The notes beneath the pieces were generated by a model. It ran no database searches and had not been told where the DNA came from. It saw only the letters and a list, made by a program, of their open reading frames with translations. A DNA stretch of 64,000 nt, from positions 1 through 64,000 of the IMG/VR virus record IMGVR_UViG_3300042922_000643. One strand, given 5' to 3'. Position 1 is the first letter of the stretch. The number at the start of each line of letters is the position of its first letter. Below are positions 2-51,897 of this stretch, piece after piece. The translations under genes and the position numbers were made by a program.

Positions 2-181
2 GCGGGTATAGAATGTACAGCTATGAATATCATAAGCATGATAGTTAAAAAAGCTCCTCCATTAGAATCATTCAATCGCGCTCATGCCTTGTCGTATAGC
101 TTTATCAGCCATCCTGACACCTATGAAGGCTTGCTTACTAGTAACGAAAAATGCATGTTTTTACTGGATGATCAGGAGTGA
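2..181 (+). CDS. Partial hypothetical protein (5' end outside window) with C-terminal tag NEKCMFLLDDQE
   Basis: Frame open from base 2 to TGA at 179-181 (my translation; not in the ORF track). Confidence 0.65.
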   Translation, partial: AGIECTAMNIISMIVKKAPPLESFNRAHALSYSFISHPDTYEGLLTSNEKCMFLLDDQE

Positions 182-186
182 TACCT

Positions 187-330
187 ATGATCGATGAATA
201 CAAGCCTATGTCTAGTGAGGAAATAGATCTTTGGATAAAAAAAGTACAGAAGGAAGTTAATGAAACTTTAATCCGATTATTGTGGAGAACGAACGAGGAT
301 TATTCTAAAGATTTACAAGATTGTGAGTAA
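187..330 (+). CDS. 47-aa hypothetical protein with C-terminal tag NEDYSKDLQDCE
   Basis: AGGAG RBS upstream of ATG187; MIDEYKPMSSEEIDLWIKKVQKEVNETLIRLLWRTNEDYSKDLQDCE; below the ORF-track size cutoff. Confidence 0.75.
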   Translation: MIDEYKPMSSEEIDLWIKKVQKEVNETLIRLLWRTNEDYSKDLQDCE

Positions 331-342
331 GGAGGTTGGAAT

Positions 343-690
343 ATGTCCTGGGCATGGATCACTGGTGAACTATCGACTAGAGACGTAACTGAAATCGGAT
401 CAAGGAGAGGGAACATTGGATATACTCCGCAGCCTGTCACTTTCCCTGTGTCAAGAGAACAGCAAATAGCTAGACCGCTCAATCAGTCTCATATTTATAC
501 GTCATTAGATGCTACTGAGTATCTAGTGAATAGTAGTAGGAGTATGCACTATTCAGGTTCCCTAGAGGAATTTAATCTCATCGTTCGAGATCGCGCTCGC
601 CTGATAGAAAGAGATATTTACCAAACATTTTTTGCTTTTAGCTCCAGATCGAACGAAGATTATATCAAAAATCTACAAGATATTGATTAG
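343..690 (+). CDS. Hypothetical protein with C-terminal tag NEDYIKNLQDID
   Basis: AAGGAGGT RBS; ORF track. Confidence 0.8.
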   Translation: MSWAWITGELSTRDVTEIGSRRGNIGYTPQPVTFPVSREQQIARPLNQSHIYTSLDATEYLVNSSRSMHYSGSLEEFNLIVRDRARLIERDIYQTFFAFSSRSNEDYIKNLQDID

Positions 691-700
691 GAGGATTCAT

Positions 701-1021
701 ATGGATATCGGTAATGCAATGGGATTAATTAAGGAAGGAAGAAAAGTTGGACGAAAGGCCTGGGGCAAAAACAATGTATTTGCTTCTTCTTCCAATGATC
801 GTACATGGATTGTTCTTATGCCTGAGTTAAAGCTTCCTGCTTACTCCGCTCAAATTGCTGGAGCAAAAGTCAATGACAGAACCGCTAAACATATTGGTCA
901 TGATACACCACTTAATTCCCAGCCTTACATCGCGCTTTGGGTAGGTGATGGTCGTTGGCAGCCAGGCTGGATACCTACACAAGAAGACCTCTTGGCCATG
1001 GATTATTTTATTGTAGATTAA
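701..1021 (+). CDS. DUF2829 / Tad2-like (Thoeris anti-defence sponge family) protein
   Basis: Start moved to ATG701 after AGGAGG; family pattern AMGLIKEGRKVGRKAW ... GWIPTQEDLLAMDY. Confidence 0.75.
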   Translation: MDIGNAMGLIKEGRKVGRKAWGKNNVFASSSNDRTWIVLMPELKLPAYSAQIAGAKVNDRTAKHIGHDTPLNSQPYIALWVGDGRWQPGWIPTQEDLLAMDYFIVD

Positions 1022-1042
1022 ATATGACATGGAGGTAAGACT

Positions 1043-1213
1043 ATGGCAAAAGCAATCATAACTATTGATGCTGAGGAATTTTGGGTAGCACTTCGTGAGT
1101 ATATTCAAAAACATTATGGAATTACTGCTATGGATCTCGTCGTGAAGTATAGCAGAGGAGAAATCACACAGATTATCGCAGAATATGAATTTAAAAAGAT
1201 ACTTGAAAACTAG
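1043..1213 (+). CDS. 56-aa hypothetical protein
   Basis: GGAGGT RBS; MAKAIITIDAEEFWVALREYIQKHYG... Confidence 0.7.
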   Translation: MAKAIITIDAEEFWVALREYIQKHYGITAMDLVVKYSRGEITQIIAEYEFKKILEN

Positions 1214-1258
1214 CCCACTAAGGTGGGTATACATAAAGGATTAGGAGGTGCTAAGCAA

Positions 1259-1627
1259 ATGTATCTACTTGAAATCAAATATGAAGATAAAATTCATATT
1301 ATTGAGAAGATCCAAGTTTTGGAGCAATCTTCTGATTACCCAGAAGTTAAGTTTGCTTACATTGAAGTGCCACATAACGTACTTCAGCTTTCTCATAACG
1401 ATAGGTTTCTACGTACTTTTTTTAGCGGTATAGGTTCAAGTTGTTACCCTATTATTTATCAAGACCCTGATTTCCCTATGGATGAAAATGCACAAACCTC
1501 AAGATGTGTGTCTAGTAGTCCGTATCGATGGATTGAAATATCTACTTCGGAAAAAGGAAAACTTGCAACCTTACTTACCGATGCAGTTAATCAAGAATTT
1601 GCTCGTCACTTACCTGATTTTGAGTAG
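1259..1627 (+). CDS. Paralog family A member 1, with C-terminal tag NQEFARHLPDFE
   Basis: AGGAGGTG RBS before ATG1259; shares AYI/AFI and YRWIEIS motifs with downstream genes. Confidence 0.8.
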   Translation: MYLLEIKYEDKIHIIEKIQVLEQSSDYPEVKFAYIEVPHNVLQLSHNDRFLRTFFSGIGSSCYPIIYQDPDFPMDENAQTSRCVSSSPYRWIEISTSEKGKLATLLTDAVNQEFARHLPDFE

Positions 1628-1638
1628 GAGGCTTTAAA

Positions 1639-2007
1639 ATGTATACTGTTGAAATTACAGCGAATGGTCTTCATTTGATCAAGGATGTCTTATACCTTGA
1701 AAAGATGACGGATTGGGATAATCAAAGATGGGCGTTTATTAAACTAGATAGTAAAGAAGAACTTCAAAGATATCGACAAGACGATAGCTTGAGGCATATA
1801 TTTGGTGTTTTCGGCTGGACCGCATACACTTTTGAATATATACAGCCAGGTTTTCAACTTGCAGATAAGCATGATGCGACAATGTTTGGACAAGACTCTA
1901 TATATCGATGGATTGAAATATCGAATTCATTAAAAGGTCAACACGCTGTACTCCATCGGGCATTATATAATGAAGAATATTTGCCTATACTATCAGATTA
2001 TGAATAG
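1639..2007 (+). CDS. Paralog family A member 2, tag NEEYLPILSDYE
   Basis: RBS; WAFIK and YRWIEIS motifs. Confidence 0.8.
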   Translation: MYTVEITANGLHLIKDVLYLEKMTDWDNQRWAFIKLDSKEELQRYRQDDSLRHIFGVFGWTAYTFEYIQPGFQLADKHDATMFGQDSIYRWIEISNSLKGQHAVLHRALYNEEYLPILSDYE

Positions 2008-2018
2008 GAGGTGCTACT

Positions 2019-2408
2019 GTGTATACCGTATACCTGGCATCCGATCCAGAAAAATTTCGATTTAAGGTCTGGGCTTTTGAGAAAGTGCATGGAAATTTGG
2101 ATGCAACTACAAGAGCGTGGGCTTGTATTAAATTCAAAGACAGGGCAGAACATGATAGATTTAAGACTGATCCTATCACTTCAGTTCATTATGAGGGAAG
2201 CGCTGGCCCACCTAAAAACGATGTCTATTACCGCATCGAAGGTTTCAGCATTGAAGATGATAAAATTTTAGAAGAGATGGAACGTGAAAATAGCTGTTAT
2301 CGCTGGTTACTATCTTCTAACAACATAGAAGATGGAACATATTGGATATACGAACTTGAACCTCAATCTAATGAAGATAGTCTATGCTTGCTTTGCGATG
2401 CTGAGTAA
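2019..2408 (+). CDS. Paralog family A member 3, tag NEDSLCLLCDAE
   Basis: AGGAGGTG RBS, GTG start; WACIK and YRWLLSS motifs. Confidence 0.8.
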   Translation: MYTVYLASDPEKFRFKVWAFEKVHGNLDATTRAWACIKFKDRAEHDRFKTDPITSVHYEGSAGPPKNDVYYRIEGFSIEDDKILEEMERENSCYRWLLSSNNIEDGTYWIYELEPQSNEDSLCLLCDAE

Positions 2409-2411
2409 GGA

Positions 2412-2735
2412 GTGTTTCCTATGGTCAATTTATACTGGGTTTATTCGGATCAGAACTGGGTCATTCAAAAGGGCACAGTAAGTTATTGGTTGACTGATCA
2501 TATGTATGAAGCAGTAAGGGATGCTAATGGAAGCTTCCTAATTTCCAGTGAATATGAAAATGTAATTTTCAATGATATGCCGACAGATATGTTTGAGTTT
2601 ATTCCAAGGGAGGAAGTTAAAATGCAACCTGTTCTACAGATCACCTGTCTTGAATGTGGCAAAAATGCGGATATTAAGCCAGGCGAGCATTGGATTTGCG
2701 GCGACTGCAAAAATAAACAGGAAAAAAGCAGTTAA
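2412..2735 (+). CDS. Hypothetical protein with C-terminal Zn ribbon
   Basis: CLEC...CGDC. Confidence 0.65.
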   Translation: MFPMVNLYWVYSDQNWVIQKGTVSYWLTDHMYEAVRDANGSFLISSEYENVIFNDMPTDMFEFIPREEVKMQPVLQITCLECGKNADIKPGEHWICGDCKNKQEKSS

Positions 2736-2738
2736 GAG

Positions 2739-3077
2739 GTGATGTTAATGAAATTTCTTGTCTATAAAAAGAATCCTGATTTGTTTCGAAAGAGAGTTCT
2801 TGTCATCGATATATGGATGAAAACAGATAAGTATGCCTGCTTTGAACTTGCCGAGGACGAAAGCTGTCCTTTTAGCTGCGGAGAAGGTGCTCCAGGATCT
2901 GATAGTGATATCTTATATGTTGATCCATCTTTTCAGCTCACCGAAGAAATATTAGAAGAAATGGATGCTTCAGATACTCGGTTTAAGTGGGTTAAACTTA
3001 GCAATGAACATGTTGAATTCGTTGATGTCCTTGATACAAATGAATCTATGGTCAGTATTCTACGAGAGTGTGAATAG
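2739..3077 (+). CDS. Paralog family A member 4, tag NESMVSILRECE
   Basis: YACFE and FKWVKLS motifs; shares EEILEEM with 2019..2408 (DKILEEM). Confidence 0.75.
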   Translation: MMLMKFLVYKKNPDLFRKRVLVIDIWMKTDKYACFELAEDESCPFSCGEGAPGSDSDILYVDPSFQLTEEILEEMDASDTRFKWVKLSNEHVEFVDVLDTNESMVSILRECE

Positions 3078-3483
3078 GAGGTGTTTAGGTGACTGATTAT
3101 ACTCATGTAAAAAAAGAACAATGGACTGCTGAAGAAATTACGGAACATCTTAAAAATATTGGTGTGACTGGGCCTATTGATAAGCCTAAAAGTTCAAAGC
3201 TAGGTACAACAGCGCCACAACAAAAATACGGTAGTTCTCGCTATGTACAGCGCGGCGGAGAACGATGGTAGGAGGTATAGATAATGGAATTCATTGGCGA
3301 AAAGGACCGTCAAATCTGGAAAGCATTGTATTCAACACTTACCACTGCTCAGATTGAAAAAGCTTTACGCAATGCAAAACTCAGCCATGAAGACTGGATC
3401 TTATTTCTTAAAATATTTCACAAATAATTTCGTTGCTACAACCATAACCTTATGGTACTATAAAAAGGAAAAGGAGCTCTATT

Positions 3484-3768
3484 ATGGAACGCACTGTACA
3501 AGAATGGATTAAACAACGGCGGCGACAGATGCTTCTCCATTCCTTCATGTATTATCGTATGGGAGAAAGTCTAGTGTCGGATGAACAATTTGATAAGTGG
3601 GCAAGAGAACTACTCTTTCTACAAACGGAATATCCTCAGGAGTCTCTTGAAGTTGAATTCTATGAAGATTTCAAGACGTGGGATGCAACAACAGGCTATC
3701 ATCTTTCTTTCCATGAATATGATTGGCTAGAACCGCTAGCTCGTTCCATGCTTGATTATCATAAATAA
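3484..3768 (+). CDS. Stand-alone NAD+-dependent DNA ligase domain Ia-like protein
   Basis: LLHSFMYYRMGESLVSDEQFDKWAREL..LQTEYP matches the LigA N-terminal H..YY....ISD.EYD...EL..LE..P pattern. Confidence 0.7.
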   Translation: MERTVQEWIKQRRRQMLLHSFMYYRMGESLVSDEQFDKWARELLFLQTEYPQESLEVEFYEDFKTWDATTGYHLSFHEYDWLEPLARSMLDYHK

Positions 3769-3782
3769 GGAGTGATTTATTA

Positions 3783-4022
3783 ATGAAGAAGATTGGCCAT
3801 TTTCTGCTTAGGAATATACACTGGGGATTTATTGCTTGTATGATTTACTGGATATTTAACGGAATCCAGGTGATTAGAGGAGAATGGGTCTTTGACAAAG
3901 GAGATTCTGTATTCTCATGTATTATGGTAGCTCTCTTCTTTGCACAGGCCACTGTTCAACACCTTAGAGATATCAGACGTAATCCTGAGTGGTATGGCAA
4001 AGTAACAAAACGGGATGTATAA
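3783..4022 (+). CDS. Small membrane protein (2 TM)
   Basis: Two hydrophobic segments; RBS. Confidence 0.6.
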   Translation: MKKIGHFLLRNIHWGFIACMIYWIFNGIQVIRGEWVFDKGDSVFSCIMVALFFAQATVQHLRDIRRNPEWYGKVTKRDV

Positions 4023-4058
4023 TTCAACTACCATCATTGACGAACAGTAGGTGATACT

Positions 4059-4304
4059 ATGCGTGCAAGAGGCGAAAAACATTATAAAGCTGTTTTGACC
4101 GATATGCAAGTAGCCATCATACGGGAAATGATAAACGACGGTATTCGTTTGAACGAAATCCAAGAAAACTTTGGTATTTCCAGAAGTGTTCTTCATAGTA
4201 TTAGTGCGAATTTTAGCTGGAAACATATTGCGCCACCTTCTCGTGCAAAAAAAGGTCGTGCGGATGGTCGATTGAGAGAAAAAGAAACTTCAGAAAACCC
4301 ATAA
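4059..4304 (+). CDS. HTH protein resembling the C-terminal DNA-binding module of phage HNH endonucleases
   Basis: RGEKHYKAVLTDMQVAIIR...IQENFGISRSVLHSI....SWKHI. Confidence 0.6.
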   Translation: MRARGEKHYKAVLTDMQVAIIREMINDGIRLNEIQENFGISRSVLHSISANFSWKHIAPPSRAKKGRADGRLREKETSENP

Positions 4305-4677
4305 AGGAGATTCTAGTATGTTTAAACCAAATGTACATTTGAAGTATGTCATGGAAGTAGAAGATCTTCTTATAAAAGCTGTAGCTGCTCTCGATGAAGT
4401 ACAAAGTAAGGATATACTTGATGGTCGCGCTCAATATGCTATTAGCCAAATCCAAAAAATGATTCATGCAGTAGATCACGCCATCATTTCAGAACGTTAT
4501 GTTATGATGAATACGTTTGAAGCTGCAAAAGATAACCAGAAAGAATTATTAAATCGATCTGAACAACAACGTTTAGAACGTCTTGAAGGTATTAAAGAAA
4601 GAGCAAAAGAAGAAGGTAGCACTTATATTAGGTAAAATTTCTGGGTGGCGGTATGTTCTATCCAGGCATCGGTGCAT

Positions 4678-4748
4678 GGGGTAGGTAGCCCAAGTGAGAG
4701 GCGGCCTGACAAGGGAGGAGATGGCGGCGAAAACCCGCCCCTACCCCT
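4678..4748 (+). ncRNA. tRNA-like RNA A (no anticodon loop)
   Basis: Acceptor GGGGTAGG/CCTACCCC, then TA, D-arm GCC-CAAGTGAGA-GGC, CCT-GACA-AGG mini-hairpin, T-like arm GGCGG-CGAAAAC-CCGCC stacked on the acceptor; followed by a T-run. Confidence 0.6.
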
Positions 4749-4785
4749 ATACTTTTTTTATAGAAGTAGCACTACATAATGGGAG

Positions 4786-5121
4786 GTGAGATCCATGCAA
4801 AAACTTATTCGTGACAATGAAAAATGGATCATCGAAGAGTTACACGGCAAAGAAGCATACACTCGAACTATTGACGATGATACTTCTTTCATCTATGAAG
4901 GCACTAGAAAGCTTCTTCTTGATGCAGGAGAGTACGCAAGATCCAAAGATGTCTGTGAAAATTTGGAGAAGCTTGCAGATATTCTTGAGATTGTATATGC
5001 ATTAGGTGCTGCAAGCGGATTTTCTCCTGAGTTATTGGATGAAACAAGACAGAGCAAAGCAAAAACATACGGTCGATTTGATAAGAGGATCTTTCTTGTC
5101 GGAATTGATAACGGTCAATAA
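4786..5121 (+). CDS. Phosphoribosyl-ATP pyrophosphohydrolase / MazG-like NTP pyrophosphatase
   Basis: KLIRD N-terminus; LADILEIVYAL; K...GRFDKRIFL C-terminus. Confidence 0.7.
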   Translation: MRSMQKLIRDNEKWIIEELHGKEAYTRTIDDDTSFIYEGTRKLLLDAGEYARSKDVCENLEKLADILEIVYALGAASGFSPELLDETRQSKAKTYGRFDKRIFLVGIDNGQ

Positions 5122-5569
5122 GGAGATTTTTCTATGAGAGTTAACTTACAAAATAACGCAATGAAGCCGCGAATCAAACTCCTATCTCATAAAGAAATTC
5201 TTACCTGTTCTGACACTCAGTATGTCGTTAAGGAAAACAATGGATACTACTTGGCAACAAGAGAGCCAGAACATCTAGGAAGTAGGCCGACCATGCATGT
5301 TAAATTCCTTCGTGATTTTATAGTCACTTCTAAACCTAATCAGTCATCAAGAATATACAAAATCTTAGGATCGAAGTAAACTGAAATTGGGAGGTGAAGA
5401 AATGAACGAGAATGAAAAGCTATATCTGTGTGATACTATCACTATTCTCATTGATTACGATGGCTTTCGTACACCTGAAGGTTTGATGTCCCTAATCGAT
5501 GAAGTGAAAGAAAGACTCGTTAATATCCGTGACAATAAAGTCACATCGGATACGGTTTAACTTTTTAAT

Positions 5570-5747
5570 GTGCGCCTCGCTAGTTGGAGCATCAAGCTGG
5601 TTCGAGTCCAGCAGGCATGGGGTTGTTGGTGACTCACAAGGCAGCTAGAGGAACCAACAAATACTACAGAGGGAGTCCCACCAGAGGGAAATAAGGCTGT
5701 GGTTCAAAACTTCCGACACTGAGGTTTGTCCTGGTTTCTCAGTGTCA
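5570..5747 (+). ncRNA. tRNA-like element B (D and T arms only) followed by further hairpins
   Basis: GCT-AGTTGG-AGC D-arm; GCTGG-TTCGAGT-CCAGC T-arm; GCCT/AGGC closing stem; downstream stems TTGTTGGT/ACCAACAA and GACACTGAG/CTCAGTGTC. Confidence 0.55.
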
Positions 5748-5772
5748 CCCTATATATTAAGGAGCAATCATT

Positions 5773-6006
5773 ATGCAGTGGCTATACACAATATTCGAAT
5801 GGACGTGGCATTTGAATTCTTTCGGGAACTTTATGTGGACTGTTTTTCTGATTGCGATCTTTATCTGGTCATTTTTGGGCATGCTATTCATCGCTGGAGC
5901 TAATGATCCTACGTTAGGTAGATTGATTAGATTTTTTACTATATGGTTTACTAGTCCACTGATTGTTCTTTTACTTGTTGGTTACATTGGATATTTGTCA
6001 TTTTAG
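5773..6006 (+). CDS. Small membrane protein
   Basis: Hydrophobic; AAGGAG RBS. Confidence 0.65.
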   Translation: MQWLYTIFEWTWHLNSFGNFMWTVFLIAIFIWSFLGMLFIAGANDPTLGRLIRFFTIWFTSPLIVLLLVGYIGYLSF

Positions 6007-7873: not shown

Positions 7874-8886
7874 TTTAGTTATAGACACACACTGTGAAGT
7901 ATGTAAAAGCGATTTTATGATACCTTACAGTACACATCTTGAAAATGATGTATACTGTGATACATGCAAAAGCCTCTTGGTCAAAAAAGGAGAGTTGGTT
8001 TATGAACAATGATATTGTAGTGCGTATCGTAGATCGAATCCTATCCAACCTTACAAACCGTTCTGGCTTTGGTGAGGTTTGGTGTAGCTGTGAAGAAATC
8101 ACTCATGAAAACATTAAGGCAGACCTGGAGAATATTGTTCGTCGCGAAATGGAAAGAGCGGGTATATCATGAGCCGAAAACCAAAGAAAGAATCTTCGTG
8201 GCTGAATATAATTGGAGATATATTTGAAGCCTTGGCAGATCTAGTCGAGGCTATTTTTGTGAAGTAGGAGGACTCTTATGAGTTTCGTTGATCTTAAAAC
8301 AATGGAAGACTTTATTACTTTTGAATTAGGTTCTGATGTAGTAGCTGTTGTCTTTAATAATCAATTTGAAAATCTTCTAAAAAATGGAGAAATCATTTTC
8401 TTTACACTTGAAGATGGGTATGGAACTTGTTACATGAAAAAGGGTTTCGGATTTTCCAAGCCTAAAGTTGAAATGACAATTTTTTCTTTTGACAAGGATG
8501 AATTTCTTTCCTATCGCCACAAGGATATTGGAAAAGCAATAAAGGTGTTTGAACAATTTTACAAGGATGGAACTCGATTTTTTTATGAGCCAGGTCTTCA
8601 ACAAGAAAGGCTGATGAAATGATGTATCAAGATCCTTACGATACACTCCACCTGGACGTATCAGGAATCAAAGTATCCTATGCACTAAAAAGGGATTTTA
8701 AGAATGGAGATATTGTACGATTGAGGGAGCCTTACAAGGGCTATACTCATGGTGTTATTGTTTATCATAACGAAACCTTGGGTGTTCTTGTACGTCTTCC
8801 TGGAACTTGGCAGAATGAACGTGGTGTATGGAATTATCATAAGTATTATTTCGAGCACGAAATTGACTGTGTAAAGGAGAATTGAA

Positions 8887-9246
8887 ATGAGTGGTGGAAG
8901 CAACTCTAACGCCGAAGCGGGAGGATTAGCCATATTCCCTCTCGTCGGCCTGATATTTATCATCCTTAAGCTTACTGGAGCAATTGGATGGAGTTGGTGG
9001 TGGGTTACCGTTCCATTTTGGGGGCTTCCAGTACTAGGCGGCGGACTAGTTATTGCAGGCATGATCCTTTATGTTATATTCTCTTTCTTTGGTCTTGTTT
9101 TTTCTTCTTTAGCTCTGAATGTAGCTAACAAAACCTTAGATAAAAAGAAAAAAGAAGTAGAGCTTAAAAGAATGATACAAGAACAGAGTCGTCCATACAG
9201 TGCTGATGAAATTCCGTCAAAAACAACAACAAAACATTATCTTTAA
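8887..9246 (+). CDS. Membrane protein
   Basis: LIFIILKLTGAIGWSWWWVTVPFW, a common phage TM motif. Confidence 0.7.
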   Translation: MSGGSNSNAEAGGLAIFPLVGLIFIILKLTGAIGWSWWWVTVPFWGLPVLGGGLVIAGMILYVIFSFFGLVFSSLALNVANKTLDKKKKEVELKRMIQEQSRPYSADEIPSKTTTKHYL

Positions 9247-10400: not shown

Positions 10401-10411
10401 GGGGTATATTT

Positions 10412-16714: not shown

Positions 16715-17026
16715 ATGCGGTTGATGAATCAAATACCTTTAGAATGCGTAATACCAGGAATGCGCGTAAGGCTATCACCACAATCTCCATTTCACGAAGC
16801 TGGTCAGTCTTGTGATTGGGAAGGAAACGAATATGATGGGACCGTAACTTATGTTCACAAGGCTAATATAGATTGGTTCCCTATCAATGTAATATGGGAC
16901 GGCGAGCTAGATCATTCTATTCCAGTCCTTGAACAAAAAGGAGAGTATTGTTATGGTGTTTCTGATTTGATTTTTCTCCTTGTAAATAATGAACAGCTTA
17001 CACTATTCCTGGAAGATTTCGATTGA
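16715..17026 (+). CDS. Paralog family B member 1, tag NEQLTLFLEDFD
   Basis: PGMRV...GNE..GTV...WFPINVIWD...Y.YG..DL. Confidence 0.75.
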   Translation: MRLMNQIPLECVIPGMRVRLSPQSPFHEAGQSCDWEGNEYDGTVTYVHKANIDWFPINVIWDGELDHSIPVLEQKGEYCYGVSDLIFLLVNNEQLTLFLEDFD

Positions 17027-17036: not shown

Positions 17037-17333
17037 ATGCAGAATATCCTATCGGATTTCAAACCTGGTACGCGAGTCGGGATGTCGAAGAACTCTGCAT
17101 TTTCCCATTTAAATCAATCTTTTGATGCTAGGGGAAATGAATGTCTTGGAACAGTAATAACTATCAGCTCTAGTGGAAGATGGTTTCCAATCAATGTTCT
17201 ATGGGATTACGAGGTAAGTCCTGGTTGGAAAGCATCCTGGCACCGAGGTACCTATAGTTACGGCCCAACAGATCTTGTGATTATTGGCGACAGTAATAGT
17301 AGTATGGTAGAATATCTATTAGATATAGAATAG
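17037..17333 (+). CDS. Paralog family B member 2, tag NSSMVEYLLDIE
   Basis: ATG17037 after GAGAGGTG; PGTRV...GNE..GTV...WFPINVLWD. Confidence 0.75.
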   Translation: MQNILSDFKPGTRVGMSKNSAFSHLNQSFDARGNECLGTVITISSSGRWFPINVLWDYEVSPGWKASWHRGTYSYGPTDLVIIGDSNSSMVEYLLDIE

Positions 17334-23509: not shown

Positions 23510-23937
23510 AGATCGCTTTAATCATTCTAATCATTACTCAACTAGTGTCTATCCTGATTATTATTGATCACAAAATAGCAATTAAAATGTTGCAAGAAAT
23601 GGTCCATGATTATATGAATAGATATTGGCTCCAGAGTATGAAAGATGCAGGTGCCGAAATTGTTTCTATTGATAAGGAGGACATGTTGTGAAAGAAGTTG
23701 GCAAGTGTGATGAATGCTTAAGCCTTGAAGAACTAACACCTTACGAAAACTCAGACGGTTTTGTTTCTTATCTCTGCAACGATTGTATTGGTGACTATGT
23801 TTTTCACGATTTTATTAAGGAACTAGAAGAAGAAGATAATGAAGAGCTGGAAGAAGACCTGGATGGAGAAGACGAAGATTAAGTCTTCTTTTTTCTTTGC
23901 TCTGTGGTATAATATGAAAACGAAAGAAGGTTTATCC

Positions 23938-24231
23938 ATGAGTCAAGTATGGAAGTTCCCTCTAGTGCCAATTGGAAATTCAAACATCGTTGAGGTTGAT
24001 ATGCCGTTTTACAGTAGCCCGATATCTGTTACCAATCAACATGGAGATATCATGCTCTATGCACTCGTAACGCCTCCATTAGAGAATGAGCCTAAAGTAA
24101 AGCGCCGTTTTCTAGTTGCACCTACAGGTGGGGAGATCCCCGAGTGGCCCGAAGATCGTTTTATTGGAACTGTCACGATAACTAATATTTACAATATGCA
24201 GTATGTGTTTCACATCTTTGAGGTTGACTAA
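23938..24231 (+). CDS. Phage hypothetical protein
   Basis: VWKFPL...LYALV...TGGEIP...FIGTV...VFHIFE; preceded by TGGTATAAT. Confidence 0.65.
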   Translation: MSQVWKFPLVPIGNSNIVEVDMPFYSSPISVTNQHGDIMLYALVTPPLENEPKVKRRFLVAPTGGEIPEWPEDRFIGTVTITNIYNMQYVFHIFEVD

Positions 24232-30944: not shown

Positions 30945-31205
30945 ATGGATGCTCCAAAATTCAACGTAAGGGATGAGGTTGTTGTCACTTTTCCTGACGG
31001 ATCTAGGATCAGAGGGAAAATATATCCTATTCCTGGGGCTTTTTTAAATGAGAAAGGCTACCTCGTGCTATATGAACATACAAGATTTTATATTGAAAAT
31101 GGGAAACGTTATTTCACAAGCGGAGCAAGACACCCTGAGTATATGATCACTTTATTCATAGAGAACAATGACTACTACCACCTTCAACTCGACGACCTGG
31201 AATAG
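30945..31205 (+). CDS. Small beta-barrel-like hypothetical protein, tag NDYYHLQLDDLE
   Basis: PKFNVRDEVVV N-terminus; C-terminal tag. Confidence 0.65.
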   Translation: MDAPKFNVRDEVVVTFPDGSRIRGKIYPIPGAFLNEKGYLVLYEHTRFYIENGKRYFTSGARHPEYMITLFIENNDYYHLQLDDLE

Positions 31206-33407: not shown

Positions 33408-34628
33408 TTGACAACAGAAGTGAGACCTATGGGTGTTTCGTGTCCTTTAAAATGTGTTTATTGCTATCAAGAACCCCAGAGGGTTGCGGGAAATACTAAT
33501 GCAAAATATGATTTGGCGAAGATGATTCAGGAGATCTCAAAGACTCGAACAAAGAATATTAATTTCTTTGGTGGCGAGATCTTAATGATGCCTATAGAAG
33601 ATCTAGAGGTACTGCTGGCTTACGCTCATGTTAAGTTCGGTGGATCAGGTGTTCAAACCAGCGGATCTATCATGAGAGATGAACATATTGAACTCTTCAA
33701 AAAGTACAATGTTCAGCTGGGCTTCTCCATTGACGGTCCTAACGAGCTAAACAGTCTCCGAGTTCCACGCAATCCAAAGACTCCTATTGAAAGTACAACG
33801 GATAATACAATGAAATATATCAAGCTATCAAAAGAAGCTGGGCTTGATGTAGGCCTTATTATTACCCTTCATAGAGAAAACTCTACTCCAGAACGTATTC
33901 CACGGTTGTTTAATTTTATCAAGTGGTTATGGGATCTTGGTATTCGTAGCGGGAATATTCATACTCTAGAAATTGAATCTACAATGCCGAACCACGACTT
34001 TGTATTGACACAAGAAGAGAACATCTGGGCTTACACCCAACTTGCCGAGTTCTTTAAAACGCTTCCTGACCATGGATGGAATCCTTTCGCAGAGATTAAA
34101 GACTTACTGATGGGTAACGATCAAAAAACTCTTTGTTATTGGCACCGATGCGATCCATTGAATACTCAAGCTGTCCACGGAATCGAAGGTGACGGTGCAA
34201 TCTCTAACTGTGGACGAGCAAATAAAGAAGGAATTGACTGGGTCAAAGCTCCTGATAATTATTATGCAAGATACATCAGCTTCTATCATACGCCTCAAGA
34301 TATGGGTGGCTGTAATGGATGCCGCTTCTGGACAGTATGCGGAGGAAGTTGCCCAGGTGAATCCGATCAGGGGGATTTCAGAAATAAAACAACACATTGC
34401 TCTACTCAGAAAGCAATACTTTCCTATTATGAAAAAGAACTTATTGATGAAGGCAAGCTACCCATTACGACATCGCCTTTGCTTCCTCTTGTTGAACAGC
34501 TCGTTCTTAATGGTCTTGAAAGAGGAGAGAACTTATATCTTAATACTGTTATTTCAATGATTGAAGAGATGAGAACAGAAGTCATCCAACTGGAAGTCGT
34601 AGAGGAGGATATCAATGAAACTACTTGA
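33408..34628 (+). CDS. Radical SAM/SPASM peptide or protein maturase
   Basis: CPLKCVYC, FFGGE, QTSG, FSIDGP; SPASM cysteines CYWHRC, NC, CNGC-x5-C-x3-C-x15-C. Confidence 0.92.
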   Translation: MTTEVRPMGVSCPLKCVYCYQEPQRVAGNTNAKYDLAKMIQEISKTRTKNINFFGGEILMMPIEDLEVLLAYAHVKFGGSGVQTSGSIMRDEHIELFKKYNVQLGFSIDGPNELNSLRVPRNPKTPIESTTDNTMKYIKLSKEAGLDVGLIITLHRENSTPERIPRLFNFIKWLWDLGIRSGNIHTLEIESTMPNHDFVLTQEENIWAYTQLAEFFKTLPDHGWNPFAEIKDLLMGNDQKTLCYWHRCDPLNTQAVHGIEGDGAISNCGRANKEGIDWVKAPDNYYARYISFYHTPQDMGGCNGCRFWTVCGGSCPGESDQGDFRNKTTHCSTQKAILSYYEKELIDEGKLPITTSPLLPLVEQLVLNGLERGENLYLNTVISMIEEMRTEVIQLEVVEEDINETT

Positions 34629-35559
34629 TTTTAGTATGCCACCATTTGCAAGAACGGTTTGGGCCTCTCAAGAAATAGAGAAGGAGTGGCGTCCCAAACT
34701 GGCTTTAGCCTCTCAAGCTTATGAGCGTTTAGAGTATGAAACGGTTGTTCATGGCCTTAGAGCCTGTACAACAGCACATTGTACTCCTGATGATATGGTT
34801 CGTCGGATTCAATTTTATGCAAAGAAAGGTCTTATGTATCATCCCTTACAGCAAGTAGGTGCTTATACAGGGTTCGCTCATACACACCCTCCAGTTATTC
34901 CAGGAAAACCTTGGACCTGGTTCGGTGTTGTAGCTAAAGACCCTCTTGATGCTTACACCTTTGCTGAGGCATCTGCATTGACAGAAGATTCCGCGGGTAA
35001 GGAAATAGATCACTCAACGATTGGCACTCTTCTTGGATACCCTGAATGCTGCCGAAAGTTCTTCACAGATGTATGGGCCGCGGGATATGTTGATCCTGTA
35101 TGGCAACAAGCAGAAAACTGTGAAGGTGAATACGTAGTGAAGAAAGAAGAGCATCTTATTCAGCTAAGCAAGGAGACTCCATGGGAGACTTCACCACTAC
35201 TGAGATACATTGGAGTACGTATCATGCCTCACATTCCATGCTCTCATGATTGTAAACCTTCTCTGGTTATCGCAAGAAGTTGGTTGGATCTTGGTAGAGA
35301 GTTGGCCATACCAGGCATGGAAGAGCTTGAGCAATTTCTTCGGATGCCAGTAGAATGGGATTGCTTGAAGGGGATAGCCTATGTGTCTACTCCAATCTTC
35401 AAGATTGAAACGAATTCCATGACATGTTATCCACGGCATGTTGTTCAAAAGGAAGGAACATTTAGACCAAAGAGTGGAGCAAAAGGACTGAAGTTTCCTT
35501 TTATTCCGCTAGGATCTGATAAGTTTGCTCACCTCTTTGGAGGAGGAAGCGGGTGCTAA
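34615..35559 (+). CDS. Cys/His-rich partner protein (GYPECC motif, tentatively DUF483-like)
   Basis: Overlaps the rSAM stop; IGTLLGYPECC, HIPCSHDC, AHTH. Confidence 0.65.
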   Translation: MKLLDFSMPPFARTVWASQEIEKEWRPKLALASQAYERLEYETVVHGLRACTTAHCTPDDMVRRIQFYAKKGLMYHPLQQVGAYTGFAHTHPPVIPGKPWTWFGVVAKDPLDAYTFAEASALTEDSAGKEIDHSTIGTLLGYPECCRKFFTDVWAAGYVDPVWQQAENCEGEYVVKKEEHLIQLSKETPWETSPLLRYIGVRIMPHIPCSHDCKPSLVIARSWLDLGRELAIPGMEELEQFLRMPVEWDCLKGIAYVSTPIFKIETNSMTCYPRHVVQKEGTFRPKSGAKGLKFPFIPLGSDKFAHLFGGGSGC

Positions 35560-47594: not shown

Positions 47595-47800
47595 GTCGAT
47601 CACTTATATGGTATGCTGGCACGACGAGACTGGTCAAAAAGAATGGGAGTCTATGACACCTCAAGAATTGTTTAATTTTTTGCAAGATAAGTTCATAGAG
47701 TATGGTCTTGCTATCGATGATGTATTTATTTATAACGAAGTTTCATATCAAGATCCAGCAGAGCTCTTTTTAAAGCTATTAAAAGAATGGGGAGAATAAT

Positions 47801-49410: not shown

Positions 49411-49662
49411 ATGAATAAATTTGTTTTCCGCGATGTGGAAGTTGAAGGTATCGCTGCTCGTATCCCAAAAAAAGACAGAGACCCTGAGTATTACTACTAT
49501 GAATTACGCCACGGAGATGAACCTCACCCGCCATTAACTATTGAACATGCTGTGATGGTGAATTTTTATGGAACTATCCGATCAGTTCTACCTATCCTTG
49601 TTGACGGAGAAGTTATTGATCTTACCGAAGACGAATCCTACGATATCGGATCAGAGATGTAA
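49411..49662 (+). CDS. LPD28-like domain protein
   Basis: YYYELRHGDE...TIEHAVMVNFYGTI. Confidence 0.65.
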   Translation: MNKFVFRDVEVEGIAARIPKKDRDPEYYYYELRHGDEPHPPLTIEHAVMVNFYGTIRSVLPILVDGEVIDLTEDESYDIGSEM

Positions 49663-49708
49663 AGGAGAAATAACAGGGAATGATAGAGTAATTACTTGAC
49701 CTGTAAAA

Positions 49709-49737
49709 GAAAAAGGCCCCTACTCGGGGGCCTCTTC
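49709..49737. terminator. Probable bidirectional terminator between convergent genes
   Basis: GGCCCC-TACTC-GGGGGCC hairpin preceded by an A-run. Confidence 0.6.
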
Positions 49738-50142
49738 TGTGGCTTCTGGGAGCCATTCTCCTGCTCTGATCTTCTCTTGCTCCCTAGCTTCCATCCAAAG
49801 ACGAACGGTGTCTTCAGGGACCTCACGGAAGTTGATGTTGTCTACTAGACCTTCAACTTGGTTATGTATATCATGTGCATCAAGATCGGGTTCATGCCAA
49901 ATCTTCCTACACGTACCACACTGCAAGATCACCGTATCTGTCTTTTCTCGGTATTCAAAGAACTTCAAATGGCCTGCGCATTTTGGGCAGTCACGACCTG
50001 TAGACCATTGGCTTTCAGCCACAGGCTGACCAGTTGTGCTTGGAGCTTGGATAATCTGTCTCCATATCGCACCAACTTGATCTAGTAGCTCCTCAGTTAA
50101 ACCATCATCGTTATTATAGGGGGTTCCTTTATTAATTGGCAT
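49720..50142 (-). CDS. Zn-ribbon hypothetical protein, isolated on the minus strand
   Basis: CPKC...CGTC; AAAGGAG RBS on the minus strand. Confidence 0.7.
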   Translation of the reverse strand: MPINKGTPYNNDDGLTEELLDQVGAIWRQIIQAPSTTGQPVAESQWSTGRDCPKCAGHLKFFEYREKTDTVILQCGTCRKIWHEPDLDAHDIHNQVEGLVDNINFREVPEDTVRLWMEAREQEKIRAGEWLPEATEEAPE

Positions 50143-50250
50143 CGGGATTCTCCTTTACGTATTGGTATAAAAATGGTATAATTCTTTATGACAAGTGTTT
50201 ACATTCCAGACTAAGCATAAGCGATTCAGGGTAAGGAAATCAATATATAA

Positions 50251-51117
50251 ATGGGGAATCAAGATATGACTGATGATTTTAAAAGACGTTACGATCAATT
50301 TGGTGACAACGCAAACCTAATCAATATGGTACACAACTTCTTACAGGAAGAAGGCCGTGCAAACCATCAGAAGCGTATCGACGAAGGACGCACAGGTAAA
50401 TTTTACCCTAGTTCTGTAGGCCGCTGTAATCGTCAAATTGCGTATCAGATGCTGGGCTACCCTGGAGCAGATAAAGCAGGGCAAACCATTCTGATTATGG
50501 ATAATGGAACCTACTTTCATAATCGTATGGAGGATATGTTTGAGCGTATGGGAATATTAGTAGCTCCTGAACTCAAGCTCGTTGATCCCGACCTAAGAAT
50601 TAGTGGTAGATCCGATGCGATCATCTGGAACTTTTTAAAAGAAGAAGATGAGCCTGACGGTGAGATCATTAGTCTGTACCAACCTAAAGCGATATTCGTG
50701 GCTGACGGAGAAGATATAGAGGTAATCTCTGAAGTCTATCATGGTCCCGCCAATAATGTTATGATCGTAGAATTTAAAAGCATTAAGAGTAAGAACTATG
50801 ACAAGCTTCCCAAGTCTAAGCCTAAAAAAGAACATGCTATGCAGTTACAGCTGTATATGTATATGACAGGAATTCGCAAGGGGCTTGTATACTACGAGAA
50901 TAAAGATACGCAGGAACAAAAATATTTCATCGTTGATTATGACCAGTCTGTCGTCGATGGTGTGATCAGCTCGATCCGCTCCATCATTGCTATGGTGGAC
51001 ATTGGCCAGCTTCCTGACAGAGAACACCCACCTATTAGCTTTGAATGCATGTATTGTGACTTCAAAGACATCTGCTATCCACAAAAACAAGAATTCAATA
51101 TTGACGATATATTTTAG
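50251..51117 (+). CDS. Cas4-like PD-(D/E)XK exonuclease
   Basis: YPSSVGRC, GTYFH, GRSD, VEFKS, QLQLYM, C-terminal CMYCDFKDIC. Confidence 0.88.
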   Translation: MGNQDMTDDFKRRYDQFGDNANLINMVHNFLQEEGRANHQKRIDEGRTGKFYPSSVGRCNRQIAYQMLGYPGADKAGQTILIMDNGTYFHNRMEDMFERMGILVAPELKLVDPDLRISGRSDAIIWNFLKEEDEPDGEIISLYQPKAIFVADGEDIEVISEVYHGPANNVMIVEFKSIKSKNYDKLPKSKPKKEHAMQLQLYMYMTGIRKGLVYYENKDTQEQKYFIVDYDQSVVDGVISSIRSIIAMVDIGQLPDREHPPISFECMYCDFKDICYPQKQEFNIDDIF

Positions 51118-51171
51118 AATATGATACAATACTTCTATAAGGATCGCTATCTTACCAAGATCACCTCAAAG

Positions 51172-51212
51172 AAAAGCCAGGGCCCGTCTAGTCAACGGAA
51201 GTCCTGGCTTTT
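51172..51212. terminator. Bidirectional terminator at the strand switch
   Basis: AAAAGCCAGGGC...GTCCTGGCTTTT. Confidence 0.75.
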
Positions 51213-51219
51213 GTCATGT

Positions 51220-51897
51220 CTATTCGTAATCAGGTAAATACTTGAGGAAGTCTTCGTTGGTATAACCAGCGAGCGACTCGTATGGACCAAGTTCTTGAGC
51301 AAAGGCTTCGGGACTATAGACTTCTCGCAAATGTTTAAGCTCGTCTTCATCATAGAGTCCTAGTCGTAATGCATCTCGATAATCATATTGTAAACATAAG
51401 AATTCATTTAGTGATTTCCCTTTGTTCTCTTCAATAAGCCGATCCATGAATGAACCTTTATGTAAGTAGCTGCCTGTAACTAAAAGTTTTGCCTGTGGGA
51501 AGTATCTTAGAATATCATCATCATTCATTCGAGGACCTTCTATAGCTCGTTTATATCCGCCCTCGTCAACTGCGATTCTTTCGAGTCGCAAACCTCTCAT
51601 TTCTTCCAGGTTCGAAGCAAAACGAATTGTAGATCCATTCTTAAGTACGATAATATCCCGATTACATATCTCAATTTGGTCTGCGTATCTATCCATGACA
51701 TCAACAACAATATGGTTTATCACATGCTTCCATTGTGTGAAATACAAAGCGTTTCCCTTTGTCTCTGCCAACCAATCAACAAGCATTGTTGTTTTTCCCA
51801 TCCGTCGTGCCATACGAACGATTGAGATTTTTGCGTCACTCTCATACAAAGCTGTCCGAATATCTTTCCCCAGTTCTAAAAGTCTTGCCTCACTCAT
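51220..51897 (-). CDS. Truncated terminase large-subunit ATPase-like protein, tag NEDFLKYLPDYE
   Basis: MARRMGKTT Walker A, LKNGSTIRF, MRG...IAVDEG Walker B, FAQE; no nuclease domain. Confidence 0.7.
   Translation of the reverse strand: MSEARLLELGKDIRTALYESDAKISIVRMARRMGKTTMLVDWLAETKGNALYFTQWKHVINHIVVDVMDRYADQIEICNRDIIVLKNGSTIRFASNLEEMRGLRLERIAVDEGGYKRAIEGPRMNDDDILRYFPQAKLLVTGSYLHKGSFMDRLIEENKGKSLNEFLCLQYDYRDALRLGLYDEDELKHLREVYSPEAFAQELGPYESLAGYTNEDFLKYLPDYE

What the first reader, a model, noticed from the sequence alone, without database searches (positions are those of the whole stretch)
2..51897. A shared 12-residue C-terminal tag, N-x6-L-x-[DE]-x-[DE]-stop, on 11 proteins from unrelated families
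Seen, last 12 residues before the stop: NEKCMFLLDDQE (stop 181), NEDYSKDLQDCE (330), NEDYIKNLQDID (690), NQEFARHLPDFE (1627), NEEYLPILSDYE (2007), NEDSLCLLCDAE (2408), NESMVSILRECE (3077), NEQLTLFLEDFD (17026), NSSMVEYLLDIE (17333), NDYYHLQLDDLE (31205), NEDFLKYLPDYE (51220, minus strand). Asn at -12, Leu at -5 and acidic residues at -3 and -1 are invariant in register. Codons vary synonymously (AAC/AAT; CTG/TTA/CTA/CTT/CTC; GAT/GAC; all three stops), which points to selection on the peptide rather than a DNA repeat. Carriers span 47-225 aa, several unrelated families and both strands. Inference: a modular docking or sorting signal attached to variable domains. It could be a capsid-packaging/ejection tag, a degron, or an adaptor tail that brings bound host targets to a common hub such as a protease.
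Basis: partly seen in the sequence, partly recalled or inferred. Interest (0 to 1): 0.88.

Follow-up and report, generated by a model that had tools for sequence, protein, structure and literature searches.

The report
Shared C-terminal docking tail in phage
An uncultured jumbo phage of Bacillus-like bacteria puts the same 12-residue acidic tail on at least 34 of its small accessory proteins, most likely so that they all dock to one common partner, which is still unknown.

Summary
All 11 tails are at the stated coordinates: 11 of 1083 six-frame ORFs match, against 0.07 expected, with no internal matches. Codon use shows that selection acts on the peptide.

The window is bases 1-64000 of a 251.5 kb uncultured jumbo phage contig, whose nearest cultured relative is Bacillus phage KLEB27-3. 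The 142 kb of this genome that I scanned holds 17 strict tails and about 17 near variants, which are 1-2 residues shorter or 1-6 longer. Most lie in tandem arrays next to replication, nucleotide-metabolism and anti-defence genes (Tad2-like, Apyc1).

Many carriers probably belong to one hyper-divergent family of small beta-barrel proteins. The tail also sits on clearly unrelated proteins, including a P-loop ATPase whose KLEB27-3 ortholog lacks it.

AlphaFold models show an N-capped short helix with a low-confidence, extended acidic end. KLEB27-3, IMG/VR, JGI metagenomes and 185,579 genomes hold no comparable set of tails. One related phage has a shifted consensus, N-x6-L-x-x-E-[WF].

Best reading: a portable docking peptide for a lineage-specific receptor that is not identified. 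Rival readings are a capsid-targeting tag like the T4 CTS, a structural helix of one family, and a degron.

The parts
2..181 (+). Carrier c181. The CDS is cut by the window start; the full protein has 73 aa (L014:9618-9839). Tail NEKCMFLLDDQE at 143-178.
187..330 (+). Carrier c330, 47 aa. Tail NEDYSKDLQDCE at 292-327. The gene is disrupted or not called in strain variants L081 and L015.
343..690 (+). Carrier c690, 115 aa, with no family match. Tail NEDYIKNLQDID at 652-687.
701..1021 (+). Context gene inside the carrier array: a Tad2-like (anti-Thoeris) protein that has no tail.
   Evidence: PF11195, E 3.4e-13
1223..1627 (+). Carrier c1627, family A. Tail NQEFARHLPDFE at 1589-1624.
1639..2007 (+). 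Carrier c2007, family A, 122 aa. Tail NEEYLPILSDYE at 1969-2004. The AlphaFold model has a beta-rich domain at residues 1-109 and a tail with pLDDT below 50.
2019..2408 (+). Carrier c2408, family A. Tail NEDSLCLLCDAE at 2370-2405.
2742..3077 (+). Carrier c3077, family A. Tail NESMVSILRECE at 3039-3074. An allele, P0005, carries NESMITMLQECE.
16715..17026 (+). Carrier c17026, family B, an SH3-like beta-barrel. Tail NEQLTLFLEDFD at 16988-17023. In the model the helix runs from N(-12) to L(-5).
17037..17333 (+). Carrier c17333, family B. Tail NSSMVEYLLDIE at 17295-17330. The DHFR gene starts 12 nt after it.
30945..31205 (+). Carrier c31205, 86 aa, downstream of the DnaG primase gene. Tail NDYYHLQLDDLE at 31167-31202.
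51220..51897 (-). Carrier c51220, 225 aa, a P-loop (Walker A/B) protein and the last gene of the sigma-factor operon. Tail NEDFLKYLPDYE at 51223-51258, the best match to the consensus. It is the positional ortholog of KLEB27-3 gp091, which has no tail.

Best explanation
The tail is a portable C-terminal peptide module. Its consensus is [STN]-N-[E]-x-Φ-Φ-x-x-L-x-[DE]-Φ-[DE], where Φ is a hydrophobic residue. It forms a short N-capped amphipathic helix from Asn -12 to Leu -5, followed by an extended acidic-hydrophobic-acidic end, with a net charge of about -3.

It is attached to at least 34 small accessory proteins of one jumbo phage. Most are fast-diverging tandem paralogs with small beta-barrel, binder-like domains. 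A few are unrelated proteins: a P-loop ATPase, a HIRAN protein and small helical proteins.

I think it works as a docking peptide (a short linear motif). The hydrophobic face (-9, -8, -5, -2) and the two acidic residues would plug into one groove of one common receptor. Many different proteins, made together with the replication, nucleotide-metabolism and anti-defence genes, would thus be tethered to the same partner, in the manner of adaptors.

The receptor is not identified. The consensus has drifted in a related phage and the tail is absent from KLEB27-3. I therefore infer that the receptor is lineage-specific and co-evolving, and more likely phage-encoded than a conserved host hub.

What is shown: the motif, its statistics, selection at the peptide level, its modularity, its low-confidence non-globular character in the models, and its restriction to this lineage. 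What is inferred: docking to a single receptor, and the adaptor role.
For: Enrichment and exclusivity at C-termini:
- 11 observed against 0.07 expected, and none internal.
- With the relaxed core, 11 against 0.86 in the window and 13 against 0.74 in the 45 kb upstream.

Selection on the peptide:
- Codon usage in the tails equals the genome's.
- Six allelic substitutions in tails all fall at variable positions.

Modularity:
- After removal of the tails there are about 18 BLAST clusters with no significant profile-profile link; the best hhalign probability is 28%.
- c51220 is a P-loop protein in conserved synteny (sigma, gp090, gp091, Cas4-like) with KLEB27-3 gp091, at 26% identity and E 2e-4. 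gp091 ends without the tail.

Structure:
- The family A model has mean pLDDT 81.5 with tail residues 110-122 below 50.
- The family B model has a helix at residues 92-99, that is N(-12) to L(-5), the last four residues as coil, and tail pLDDT of 49-64.
- The helical hydrophobic moment is 0.308, against 0.239 for shuffled tails, P = 0.006.

Carrier domains look like binders: family B resembles SH3-like barrels such as CAP-Gly, KOW-type ribosomal proteins and Tudor/Agenet domains. These matches are weak, with E of 0.07 or higher.

Context:
- Carriers lie in tight operons, 5-12 nt from the next CDS, together with DHFR/NrdD, NrdF, DnaG, a Tad2-like gene and Apyc1.

Lineage specificity with drift:
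- There are no tails in KLEB27-3.
- Pattern scans give only chance single hits in IMG/VR, JGI metagenomes and GTDB genomes.
- P0006, from a more distant contig, keeps N-x6-L-x-E-Φ.
- Related phage 3300038393_000804 has three or four proteins ending N-x-x-A-x-x-[LM]-L-x-x-E-[WF].
Against: - No receptor was found and no binding could be computed, because no multimer prediction was available.
- Thirteen or more carriers share a wider C-terminal block, [WY][FY]..DLI..N..L.D.[DE]. For them the helix could simply be part of a common fold.
- The AlphaFold alignments were shallow (4 and 13 sequences), so low pLDDT is weak evidence that the tail is detached.
- Variants that are 1-2 residues shorter or 1-6 longer show that the free carboxylate is not strictly required. 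This weakens carboxylate-clamp type models.
- About 113 kb of the genome (73.5-163.8 kb) was not scanned.
- Expression timing is unknown; the sigma-70 promoter scan was uninformative.
Confidence: 0.45

Rival explanations
1. Capsid-targeting tag. The tail would be a C-terminal counterpart of the T4 capsid targeting sequence. It would load a diverse arsenal of small, largely anti-defence proteins into the prohead, so that they are ejected with the DNA.
For: The precedent is close. [quoted passage not shown] Giant myoviruses package many ejection proteins: SPN3US has about 50 head proteins and more than 40 MDa of ejection proteins (PMC7411985 abstract). The carriers here are small and hypervariable, lie in tandem arrays, and sit beside Tad2-like and Apyc1 genes. 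The phage has a T4-like prohead protease and capsid module.
Against: - Carriers lie 5-12 nt from replication and nucleotide-metabolism genes in the same operons. This suggests early or middle expression, not late.
- The portal, protease, capsid-like protein and major capsid protein of this phage and of eight relatives lack the tail.
- KLEB27-3 shares the head module but has no tail family.
- The T4 CTS is N-terminal.
- A P-loop ATPase of a conserved sigma-factor operon is an odd cargo.
Confidence: 0.2
2. Structural element of one hyper-divergent paralog family. The helix would be the last secondary-structure element, or an oligomerisation helix, of a small beta-barrel fold. It would be conserved for folding, not for docking to a third party.
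For: Alignment A3 shows a shared block of 25-30 residues, [WY][FY]..DLI..N..L.D.[DE], in 13 carriers from seven BLAST clusters. Family A ends in a similar way, W-I-Y-E-L...N. SH3, chromo and Sso7d-type folds often end in a C-terminal helix (established knowledge; weak Foldseek hits). AlphaFold predicts a helix for N(-12) to L(-5).
Against: - The same 12-mer, with the best consensus score, sits on a P-loop ATPase whose ortholog lacks it, and on c330, c690, c181 and x1, which do not share the block.
- The invariant residues are polar or acidic and lie at the helix C-terminus, which is unfavourable for helix stability.
- The tail is far better conserved than the fold it would stabilise.
- pLDDT is low in both models.
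Confidence: 0.2
3. Degron. The tail would mark early proteins for timed removal by a host or phage protease.
For: A shared C-terminal tag on many early or accessory proteins would give common temporal control. The relative KLEB27-3 encodes ClpP and a subtilisin-like protease.
Against: - Known bacterial C-terminal degrons (the ssrA tag for ClpX, FtsH and Tsp signals) end in non-polar residues, and acidic ends block ClpX recognition (established knowledge).
- No ClpP or other protease was found in the 142 kb scanned of this phage.
- KLEB27-3, which does have ClpP, has no tails.
Confidence: 0.08
4. Translation-level or nucleic-acid element. The tail would be a nascent-peptide arrest or termination signal read in register with the stop codon, or a conserved RNA or DNA element at gene ends.
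For: In the window the motif is strictly in register with the stop codon, and most carriers are followed within 5-12 nt by the next gene.
Against: - Codons are as variable as genome-wide usage allows, so this is not an RNA or DNA element.
- Seventeen variants have the core displaced by -2 to +6 residues from the stop.
- c51220 is the last gene of its operon and c31205 has a 109 nt gap after it.
- The tail is appended to proteins of 47-225 aa, not to leader peptides.
Confidence: 0.02

Closest known systems
T4 capsid targeting sequence (CTS) of the internal proteins IPI, IPII, IPIII and Alt
   Same: A short conserved peptide of about 10 residues is the only feature shared by a highly diverse, hypervariable set of small phage proteins, many of them anti-defence (PMC3012670). 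It is amphipathic and acidic and contains an [IL]-x-E element (from memory).
   Different: The CTS is N-terminal, is cut off by the prohead protease, and has a known destination, the scaffolding core. Here the peptide is C-terminal, the destination is unknown, the genes sit in replication-type operons, and there is no sequence similarity.
Hub-docking C-terminal tails of replication and transcription proteins: T4 gp45-clamp-binding tails of gp43, gp33 and gp55; the bacterial beta-clamp motif QL[SD]LF; the archaeal and eukaryotic PIP box; the SSB C-terminal DDDIPF; T7 gp2.5 and gp4 acidic tails
   Same: Unrelated proteins carry one short C-terminal peptide that plugs into one groove of a hub. 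These peptides are acidic plus hydrophobic and disordered until bound (established knowledge).
   Different: The consensus differs. There is no Gln and no terminal aromatic pair, and D sits at -3 rather than next to L. The phage's own SSB carries the canonical DDDLPF tail, so this tail is something else. The number of carriers (34 or more) and their nature, as expanded accessory families, are unlike replisome clients.
Adaptor families with a short hub-binding box: the SspB XB tail that tethers it to ClpX; eukaryotic and viral F-box, PRANC and BC-box proteins
   Same: The architecture is a variable target-binding domain plus a short invariant docking peptide or helix. It comes with large lineage-specific expansions in tandem arrays, typical of arms-race genes (established knowledge).
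   Different: There is no sequence relationship. No hub, protease or ligase link has been shown here. XB is basic and hydrophobic, and F-boxes are 40-50 residues long.
Encapsulin cargo-loading peptides and scaffold C-terminal tails of HK97-fold viruses
   Same: A C-terminal peptide shared by unrelated cargo families directs them to the inside of an HK97-fold shell (established knowledge).
   Different: The sequence differs; those peptides are Gly- and hydrophobic-rich or basic. No capsid link is shown here, and the head proteins here lack the tail.
Hsp70/Hsp90 EEVD tail recognised by TPR carboxylate clamps
   Same: The last five residues follow the same pattern, Φ-x-[DE]-Φ-[DE]-COOH (from memory).
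   Different: No TPR protein is seen in the Pfam hits for the 142 kb scanned. Variants with extra or missing terminal residues argue against a strict carboxylate clamp.

Membership tests
Any curated protein family (Pfam-A, PHROGs) | A significant profile match covering the carriers or the tail | tested here: not met
   Pfam gave nothing for 10 carriers at E up to 0.1 apart from noise. PHROGs gave nothing, except weak terminase-like or P-loop hits for c51220. The precomputed Pfam field is '-' for all upstream carriers except the HIRAN protein.
T4-type capsid targeting sequence | N-terminal position, and removal by the prohead protease at [LI]-x-E | tested here: not met
   The peptide is C-terminal in all carriers, and their N-termini share no motif. 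Cleavage cannot be tested with these tools.
T4-type capsid targeting sequence | Carriers are present inside the virion | not testable with these tools
   This needs virion proteomics. The KLEB27-3 ortholog of c51220 (gp091) is annotated as hypothetical, not as structural.
Sliding-clamp binding motifs (QL[SD]LF, the PIP box QxxLxxFF) | Gln, then Leu, then a terminal aromatic or hydrophobic pair at fixed spacing | tested here: not met
   The column counts show no Gln at -8 or -6, D fixed at -3, and E or D at -1.
SSB C-terminal tail mimic | Ends in D-D-D-[IL]-P-F | tested here: not met
   Only the phage SSB (11926-12366) ends in DDDLPF. The tails end in D-Φ-E.
ssrA-like / ClpX C-terminal degron | A non-polar C-terminal dipeptide or tripeptide, as in LAA | tested here: not met
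   The -1 residue is E or D in all 17 strict tails, and -3 is D or E.
Ribosome arrest or termination-control peptides (TnaC, SecM, MifM type) | Fixed register to the stop or arrest codon, in a dedicated leader ORF upstream of the regulated gene | tested here: not met
   Seventeen variants have the core shifted by -2 to +6 residues. Carriers are proteins of 47-225 aa, and c51220 ends its operon.
DNA repeat or gene-conversion tract | Nucleotide identity above what the protein requires | tested here: not met
   Identical residues share a codon in 49% of pairs. Codon homozygosity in the tails (N 0.59, L 0.21, D 0.67, E 0.58) is about the genome-wide value (0.53, 0.19, 0.59, 0.54).
Short linear docking motif (generic class) | Short; outside the globular fold; found on unrelated proteins; a few invariant positions; binds one partner | tested here: inconclusive
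   The first four features are met. Binding to a partner could not be tested.

The most novel reading that the evidence does not exclude
The phage encodes its own adaptor system. More than 34 fast-evolving binder domains (SH3-like barrels and others) would each recognise a different host or defence protein. Their common tail would hand the captured targets to one phage-encoded machine. Candidates encoded among the carrier arrays are the PRTRC-like ThiF(E1)/Prok_Ub conjugation cassette (L087:2592-10963) and the J-domain protein (L088:1285-1914), which would recruit host DnaK. This would be a bacterial-virus analogue of viral F-box or BC-box hijacking of ubiquitin ligases.
Probability: 0.1. Interest if true: 0.9.

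Novelty: new variant of a known kind. Interest (0 to 1): 0.62.

Why it matters
If the tail is an address label, one 12-residue peptide defines a functional class covering more than a tenth of a jumbo phage's genes, none of which has any annotation. The label would give a direct experimental handle. The peptide could be used as bait to find the receptor, and the carriers would then form a catalogue of binder domains shaped by an arms race, sitting next to known anti-defence genes. It would also be a portable tag for sending cargo to that receptor. The drift of the consensus between related phages offers a natural co-evolution data set for locating the receptor. If the tail turns out to be only a fold element, the finding is still one of the larger lineage-specific paralog expansions described in a phage.

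Tried and rejected
Searches that found nothing:
- Megablast of bases 1-6000 and tblastn of c51220 against 50,697 phage records: no match.
- Word-indexed homolog searches for c51220, family B and the zinc-ribbon neighbour: only self or strain variants.
- A full HMMER search of 1.84 billion representatives with the family A profile: only the four paralogs, a fifth paralog in a strain variant, and one distant copy.
- The tail DNA pattern NE[DE][YF]...L.D.[DE]-TAR in IMG/VR, JGI metagenomes and GTDB genomes: only the contig itself plus single hits. Those I checked are in unrelated proteins (LigA, VWA, PGA_cap) and are chance matches. The pattern covers only about 4 of 17 strict tails, so its sensitivity is low.
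- Foldseek against the PDB: family A has no match with E below 0.8, and family B has only weak SH3-like hits.
- PDB sequence searches: nothing.
- The sigma-70 promoter and terminator scan of the carrier arrays: at or below shuffled expectation, so it says nothing about timing.
- A de novo search for another recurrent C-terminal motif in KLEB27-3: none, apart from the SSB and NrdF tails.
- No literature on such a motif.

Candidates I considered and rejected:
- Window 23839-24231, ending NMQYVFHIFEVD: rejected as a carrier, because the match lies inside a DUF7352 domain and has Ile at -5.
- An 'IPF'-ended ORF at 8685-9068 (-): rejected as an antisense artefact.
- The internal helix QEEFSKFYPELE of KLEB27-3 gp199: it resembles the tail but is part of Prok_Ub repeats.
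- Mimicry of the NrdF C-terminal tail, sigma-factor C-terminus mimicry, the FtsZ C-terminal peptide, the T7SS YxxxD/E signal and a membrane-targeting helix: rejected on register or charge.

Full report
**1. The observation.** All eleven C-terminal 12-mers are in the window at the stated stops. The regex N.{6}L.[DE].[DE]$ matches exactly these 11 of 1083 six-frame ORFs of at least 30 aa. Amino-acid composition predicts 0.07 matches, and the motif never occurs inside an ORF. A position-specific matrix built from the tails scores the eleven at 21.5-31.6, and the next best C-terminus in the window scores 2.2, so the class is sharply bounded there. Shuffling the last 20 residues of 128 called genes gives a mean of 0.02 strict hits.

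The conservation is in the protein. Leu -5 uses six codons, and codon usage at N, L, D and E in 18 tails equals genome-wide usage. Identical residues share a codon in only 49% of pairs. The ribosome-binding site of the next gene lies after the stop codon.

**2. What the sequence is.** The window is bases 1-64000 of IMGVR_UViG_3300042922_000643, a 251,543 bp contig. It carries RecA, NrdD/G, UvrD, DnaG, an SNF2 helicase, PhoH, thymidylate synthase, DHFR, a sigma factor and other genes. The closest cultured relative is Bacillus phage vB_BauM_KLEB27-3, 216 kb, with 56% identity in SNF2 and conserved gene order. This is therefore an uncultured jumbo myovirus of a Bacillus-like host. Near-identical contigs exist in other samples.

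Contigs from other samples bridge the assembly gap in front of the window. They show a 12th carrier directly after nrdF, and they show that c181 is really 73 aa long. I walked along the contig with the locus tools, covering 163.8-251.5 kb, the gap, 0-64 kb, and on to about 73.5 kb. This added four more strict tails, at L088:8045-8314, 8324-8566 and 8578-8838, and L085:2845-3147, plus one at L123:2126-2563. It also added about 17 near variants. These keep N-x6-L-x-[DE] but end one or two residues earlier, or carry 1-6 extra and mostly acidic residues.

The tally is 17 strict tails, about 17 near variants and about 7 doubtful ones. The relaxed core is also far above chance: 13 against 0.74 in the 45 kb upstream. 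The carriers lie in tandem arrays between about 197.7 kb and the contig end and at 0-3 kb, with outliers at 17, 31 and 51 kb. None lies at 186.9-196.9 kb, in the head module, or clearly at 64-73.5 kb. A strain variant has a fifth family A paralog with a strict tail, and has lost c330.

**4. Are the carriers unrelated?** Partly. Among the eleven, four are family A paralogs and two are family B paralogs. Across all 33 compiled carriers, BLAST without the tails gives about 18 clusters, and profile-profile comparison links none of them significantly. However, an alignment of 13 carriers from seven clusters shows a wider shared block before the tail: an aromatic-rich strand, then D-L-I. Family A ends in a similar way. 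Many carriers are therefore probably one hyper-divergent family of small beta-barrel proteins.

Others are clearly different. c51220 is a P-loop protein at the end of the operon made of a sigma factor, a gp090-like gene and a gp091-like gene. Its neighbour is 53% identical to KLEB27-3 gp090. c51220 itself matches gp091 at 26% identity (E 2e-4), with the same length and the same Walker motifs, yet gp091 ends without any tail. c51220 nevertheless has the best-scoring tail of all. c330, c690, c181 and the 63-aa protein lack the shared block. A HIRAN protein carries a weak version.

**5. Anatomy of the tail.** The column counts are as follows.
- Position -13 is Ser, Thr or Asn in most carriers.
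- Asn -12 is invariant.
- Position -11 is usually Glu.
- Positions -9, -8, -5 and -2 are hydrophobic.
- Leu -5 is invariant.
- Position -3 is Asp (or Glu), and -1 is Glu (or Asp).
- The net charge is about -3.

The helical hydrophobic moment exceeds that of shuffled tails, 0.308 against 0.239, P = 0.006. The family A model is confident for residues 1-109 (mean pLDDT 81.5), but residues 110-122 fall below 50. The family B model, built on the 13-sequence alignment, gives a helix exactly from N(-12) to L(-5), with the last four residues as coil and pLDDT of 49-64. I read this as an N-capped amphipathic helix followed by an extended acidic end, loosely attached to the domain.

Family A has no structural neighbour in the PDB. 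Family B resembles SH3-like barrels only weakly.

**6. Distribution.**
- KLEB27-3 has no strict hit among 2939 ORFs and no other recurrent C-terminal motif apart from the SSB and NrdF tails.
- A degenerate DNA pattern for the NE[DE][YF] subset finds only this contig in IMG/VR, and only single hits in JGI metagenomes (63) and in one genome per species of GTDB (31). Those I checked were unrelated proteins.
- Searches of billions of proteins find no homologs of the carriers outside strain variants. The one exception is P0006, from a 1.1 kb contig of a more distant relative. It keeps N-Q-D-L-L-F-T-L-K-E-I, which is the core without the last residue.
- In a related jumbo phage, IMGVR_UViG_3300038393_000804 (terminase 59% identical), 40 kb of the equivalent region has no N..L.D.E tails. 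It does have three or four proteins ending N-x-x-A-x-x-[LM]-L-x-x-E-[WF]. Two of them have no detectable similarity outside the tail. One carrier of our phage, ending NEYLSHKLLTDF, has this flavour.

The principle therefore appears older than this phage, and the consensus drifts between lineages.

**7. Mechanism.** The data fit a portable docking peptide:
- short;
- outside the confident fold;
- a few invariant, partly polar positions;
- present on unrelated proteins;
- under purifying selection at exactly those positions. Six allelic changes in tails all fall at variable positions, although the chance probability of that is about 0.09.

The carriers are small, fast-diverging and tandemly duplicated. 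They sit beside a Tad2-like gene and Apyc1, which is the pattern expected of arms-race binders. They lie 5-12 nt from neighbouring genes such as DHFR, so they are probably made with early or middle genes. I therefore favour tethering of many accessory proteins to one receptor inside the infected cell. The drift of the consensus, and its absence from KLEB27-3, point to a lineage-specific and probably phage-encoded receptor. All of this is inference, because no receptor was identified.

**8. Rivals.**
- *A C-terminal analogue of the T4 capsid targeting sequence.* This is a serious alternative, because T-even internal proteins are likewise diverse defence-related proteins united only by a short targeting peptide (PMC3012670), and giant phages package many ejection proteins. 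The operon context, the untagged head proteins and the tail-less KLEB27-3 argue against it.
- *A purely structural helix.* This explains the beta-barrel carriers but not c51220 and the small non-barrel carriers.
- *A degron.* The acidic end and the absence of a protease in the scanned 142 kb make this unlikely.
- *A termination or arrest peptide, or an RNA or DNA element.* The displaced variants and the codon data exclude these.

**9. Comparison with known systems, and novelty.** The logic matches known hub-docking tails (T4 clamp-binding tails, SSB-Ct, SspB XB), targeting peptides (T4 CTS, encapsulin cargo peptides) and adaptor boxes (F-box, BC-box). The sequence matches none of them, and no curated family covers the tail or its carriers. 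The scale, with at least 34 proteins and more than a tenth of the genes, and the restriction to one uncultured lineage are unusual. I rate it a new variant of a known kind.

**10. Limits.**
- About 113 kb of the genome was not scanned.
- The AlphaFold alignments were shallow.
- The host and the expression timing are unknown.

Noticed in passing
window 701-1021 (+); L087:353-1129: Two known anti-defence genes sit inside or beside the carrier arrays. One is a Tad2-like (anti-Thoeris) protein, PF11195, E 3.4e-13. The other is an Apyc1-type anti-Pycsar nuclease, directly after the carrier that ends NEESLVFLQDLE+LEV.
   Followed up: partly
L087:2592-10963 (contig about 228.4-236.8 kb); KLEB27-3 gp194-gp199 (L004:17647-23637): Both phages carry a PRTRC-like cassette with a ThiF/E1-like protein and a prokaryotic ubiquitin. 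KLEB27-3 gp199 is four tandem Prok_Ub repeats (PF14454, E 5e-27), a polyubiquitin-like arrangement. The window's phage has a single copy ending ...KAGTKGLILA.
   Followed up: partly
L014:5030-8107 and L014:342-4357: The class Ib RNR large subunit NrdE is split by a GIY-YIG homing-endonuclease gene. The PolIII alpha gene is in two pieces of 879 aa and 296 aa. KLEB27-3 shows the same split, with an HNH gene between the pieces.
   Followed up: no
KLEB27-3 terminase L001:5296-8250; L125; L135:1-1336: The large terminase of KLEB27-3 and several relatives contains an intein with a LAGLIDADG domain (994 aa product). The terminase of the window's phage (L133:9998-11806, 602 aa) lacks it.
   Followed up: no
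L088:1285-1914; L088:37-399 and 2958-3146; L089:9154-9630: The phage encodes a protein with a C-terminal J-domain (PF00226, E 2.5e-9) and several IDEAL-domain proteins (PF08858) between the carrier arrays. The J-domain protein could recruit host DnaK.
   Followed up: no
L136:18133-18785; L137:18585-18896 (IMGVR_UViG_3300038393_000804): A related jumbo phage has its own recurrent C-terminal tail, N-x-x-A-x-x-[LM]-L-x-x-E-[WF], on three or four small proteins. Only 40 kb of that 264 kb genome was read.
   Followed up: partly
window 24426-25199 (+), 23839-24231 (+), 33408-35559 (+), 54719-55807 (-): Other accessory genes were seen but not studied: a vWA-TerF-like protein (E 1.3e-56), a DUF7352 protein, a 406-aa radical SAM enzyme followed by a 314-aa protein of unknown function, and a GH15-like glycoside hydrolase.
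   Followed up: no
L081 (strain variant, 4.4 kb) compared with window 1-3500: Gene content differs between strains within the carrier array. The variant has an extra 146-aa family A paralog inserted after the c3077 homolog and has lost an intact c330. In L015 and L016 the c1627 homolog is called with a different start (122 aa against 134 aa).
   Followed up: partly
L123:700-4200 (contig about 197.6-201.1 kb): The carrier array here has long antisense ORFs rich in Pro and Arg. This suggests a locally different base composition from the rest of the genome. I did not measure it.
   Followed up: no
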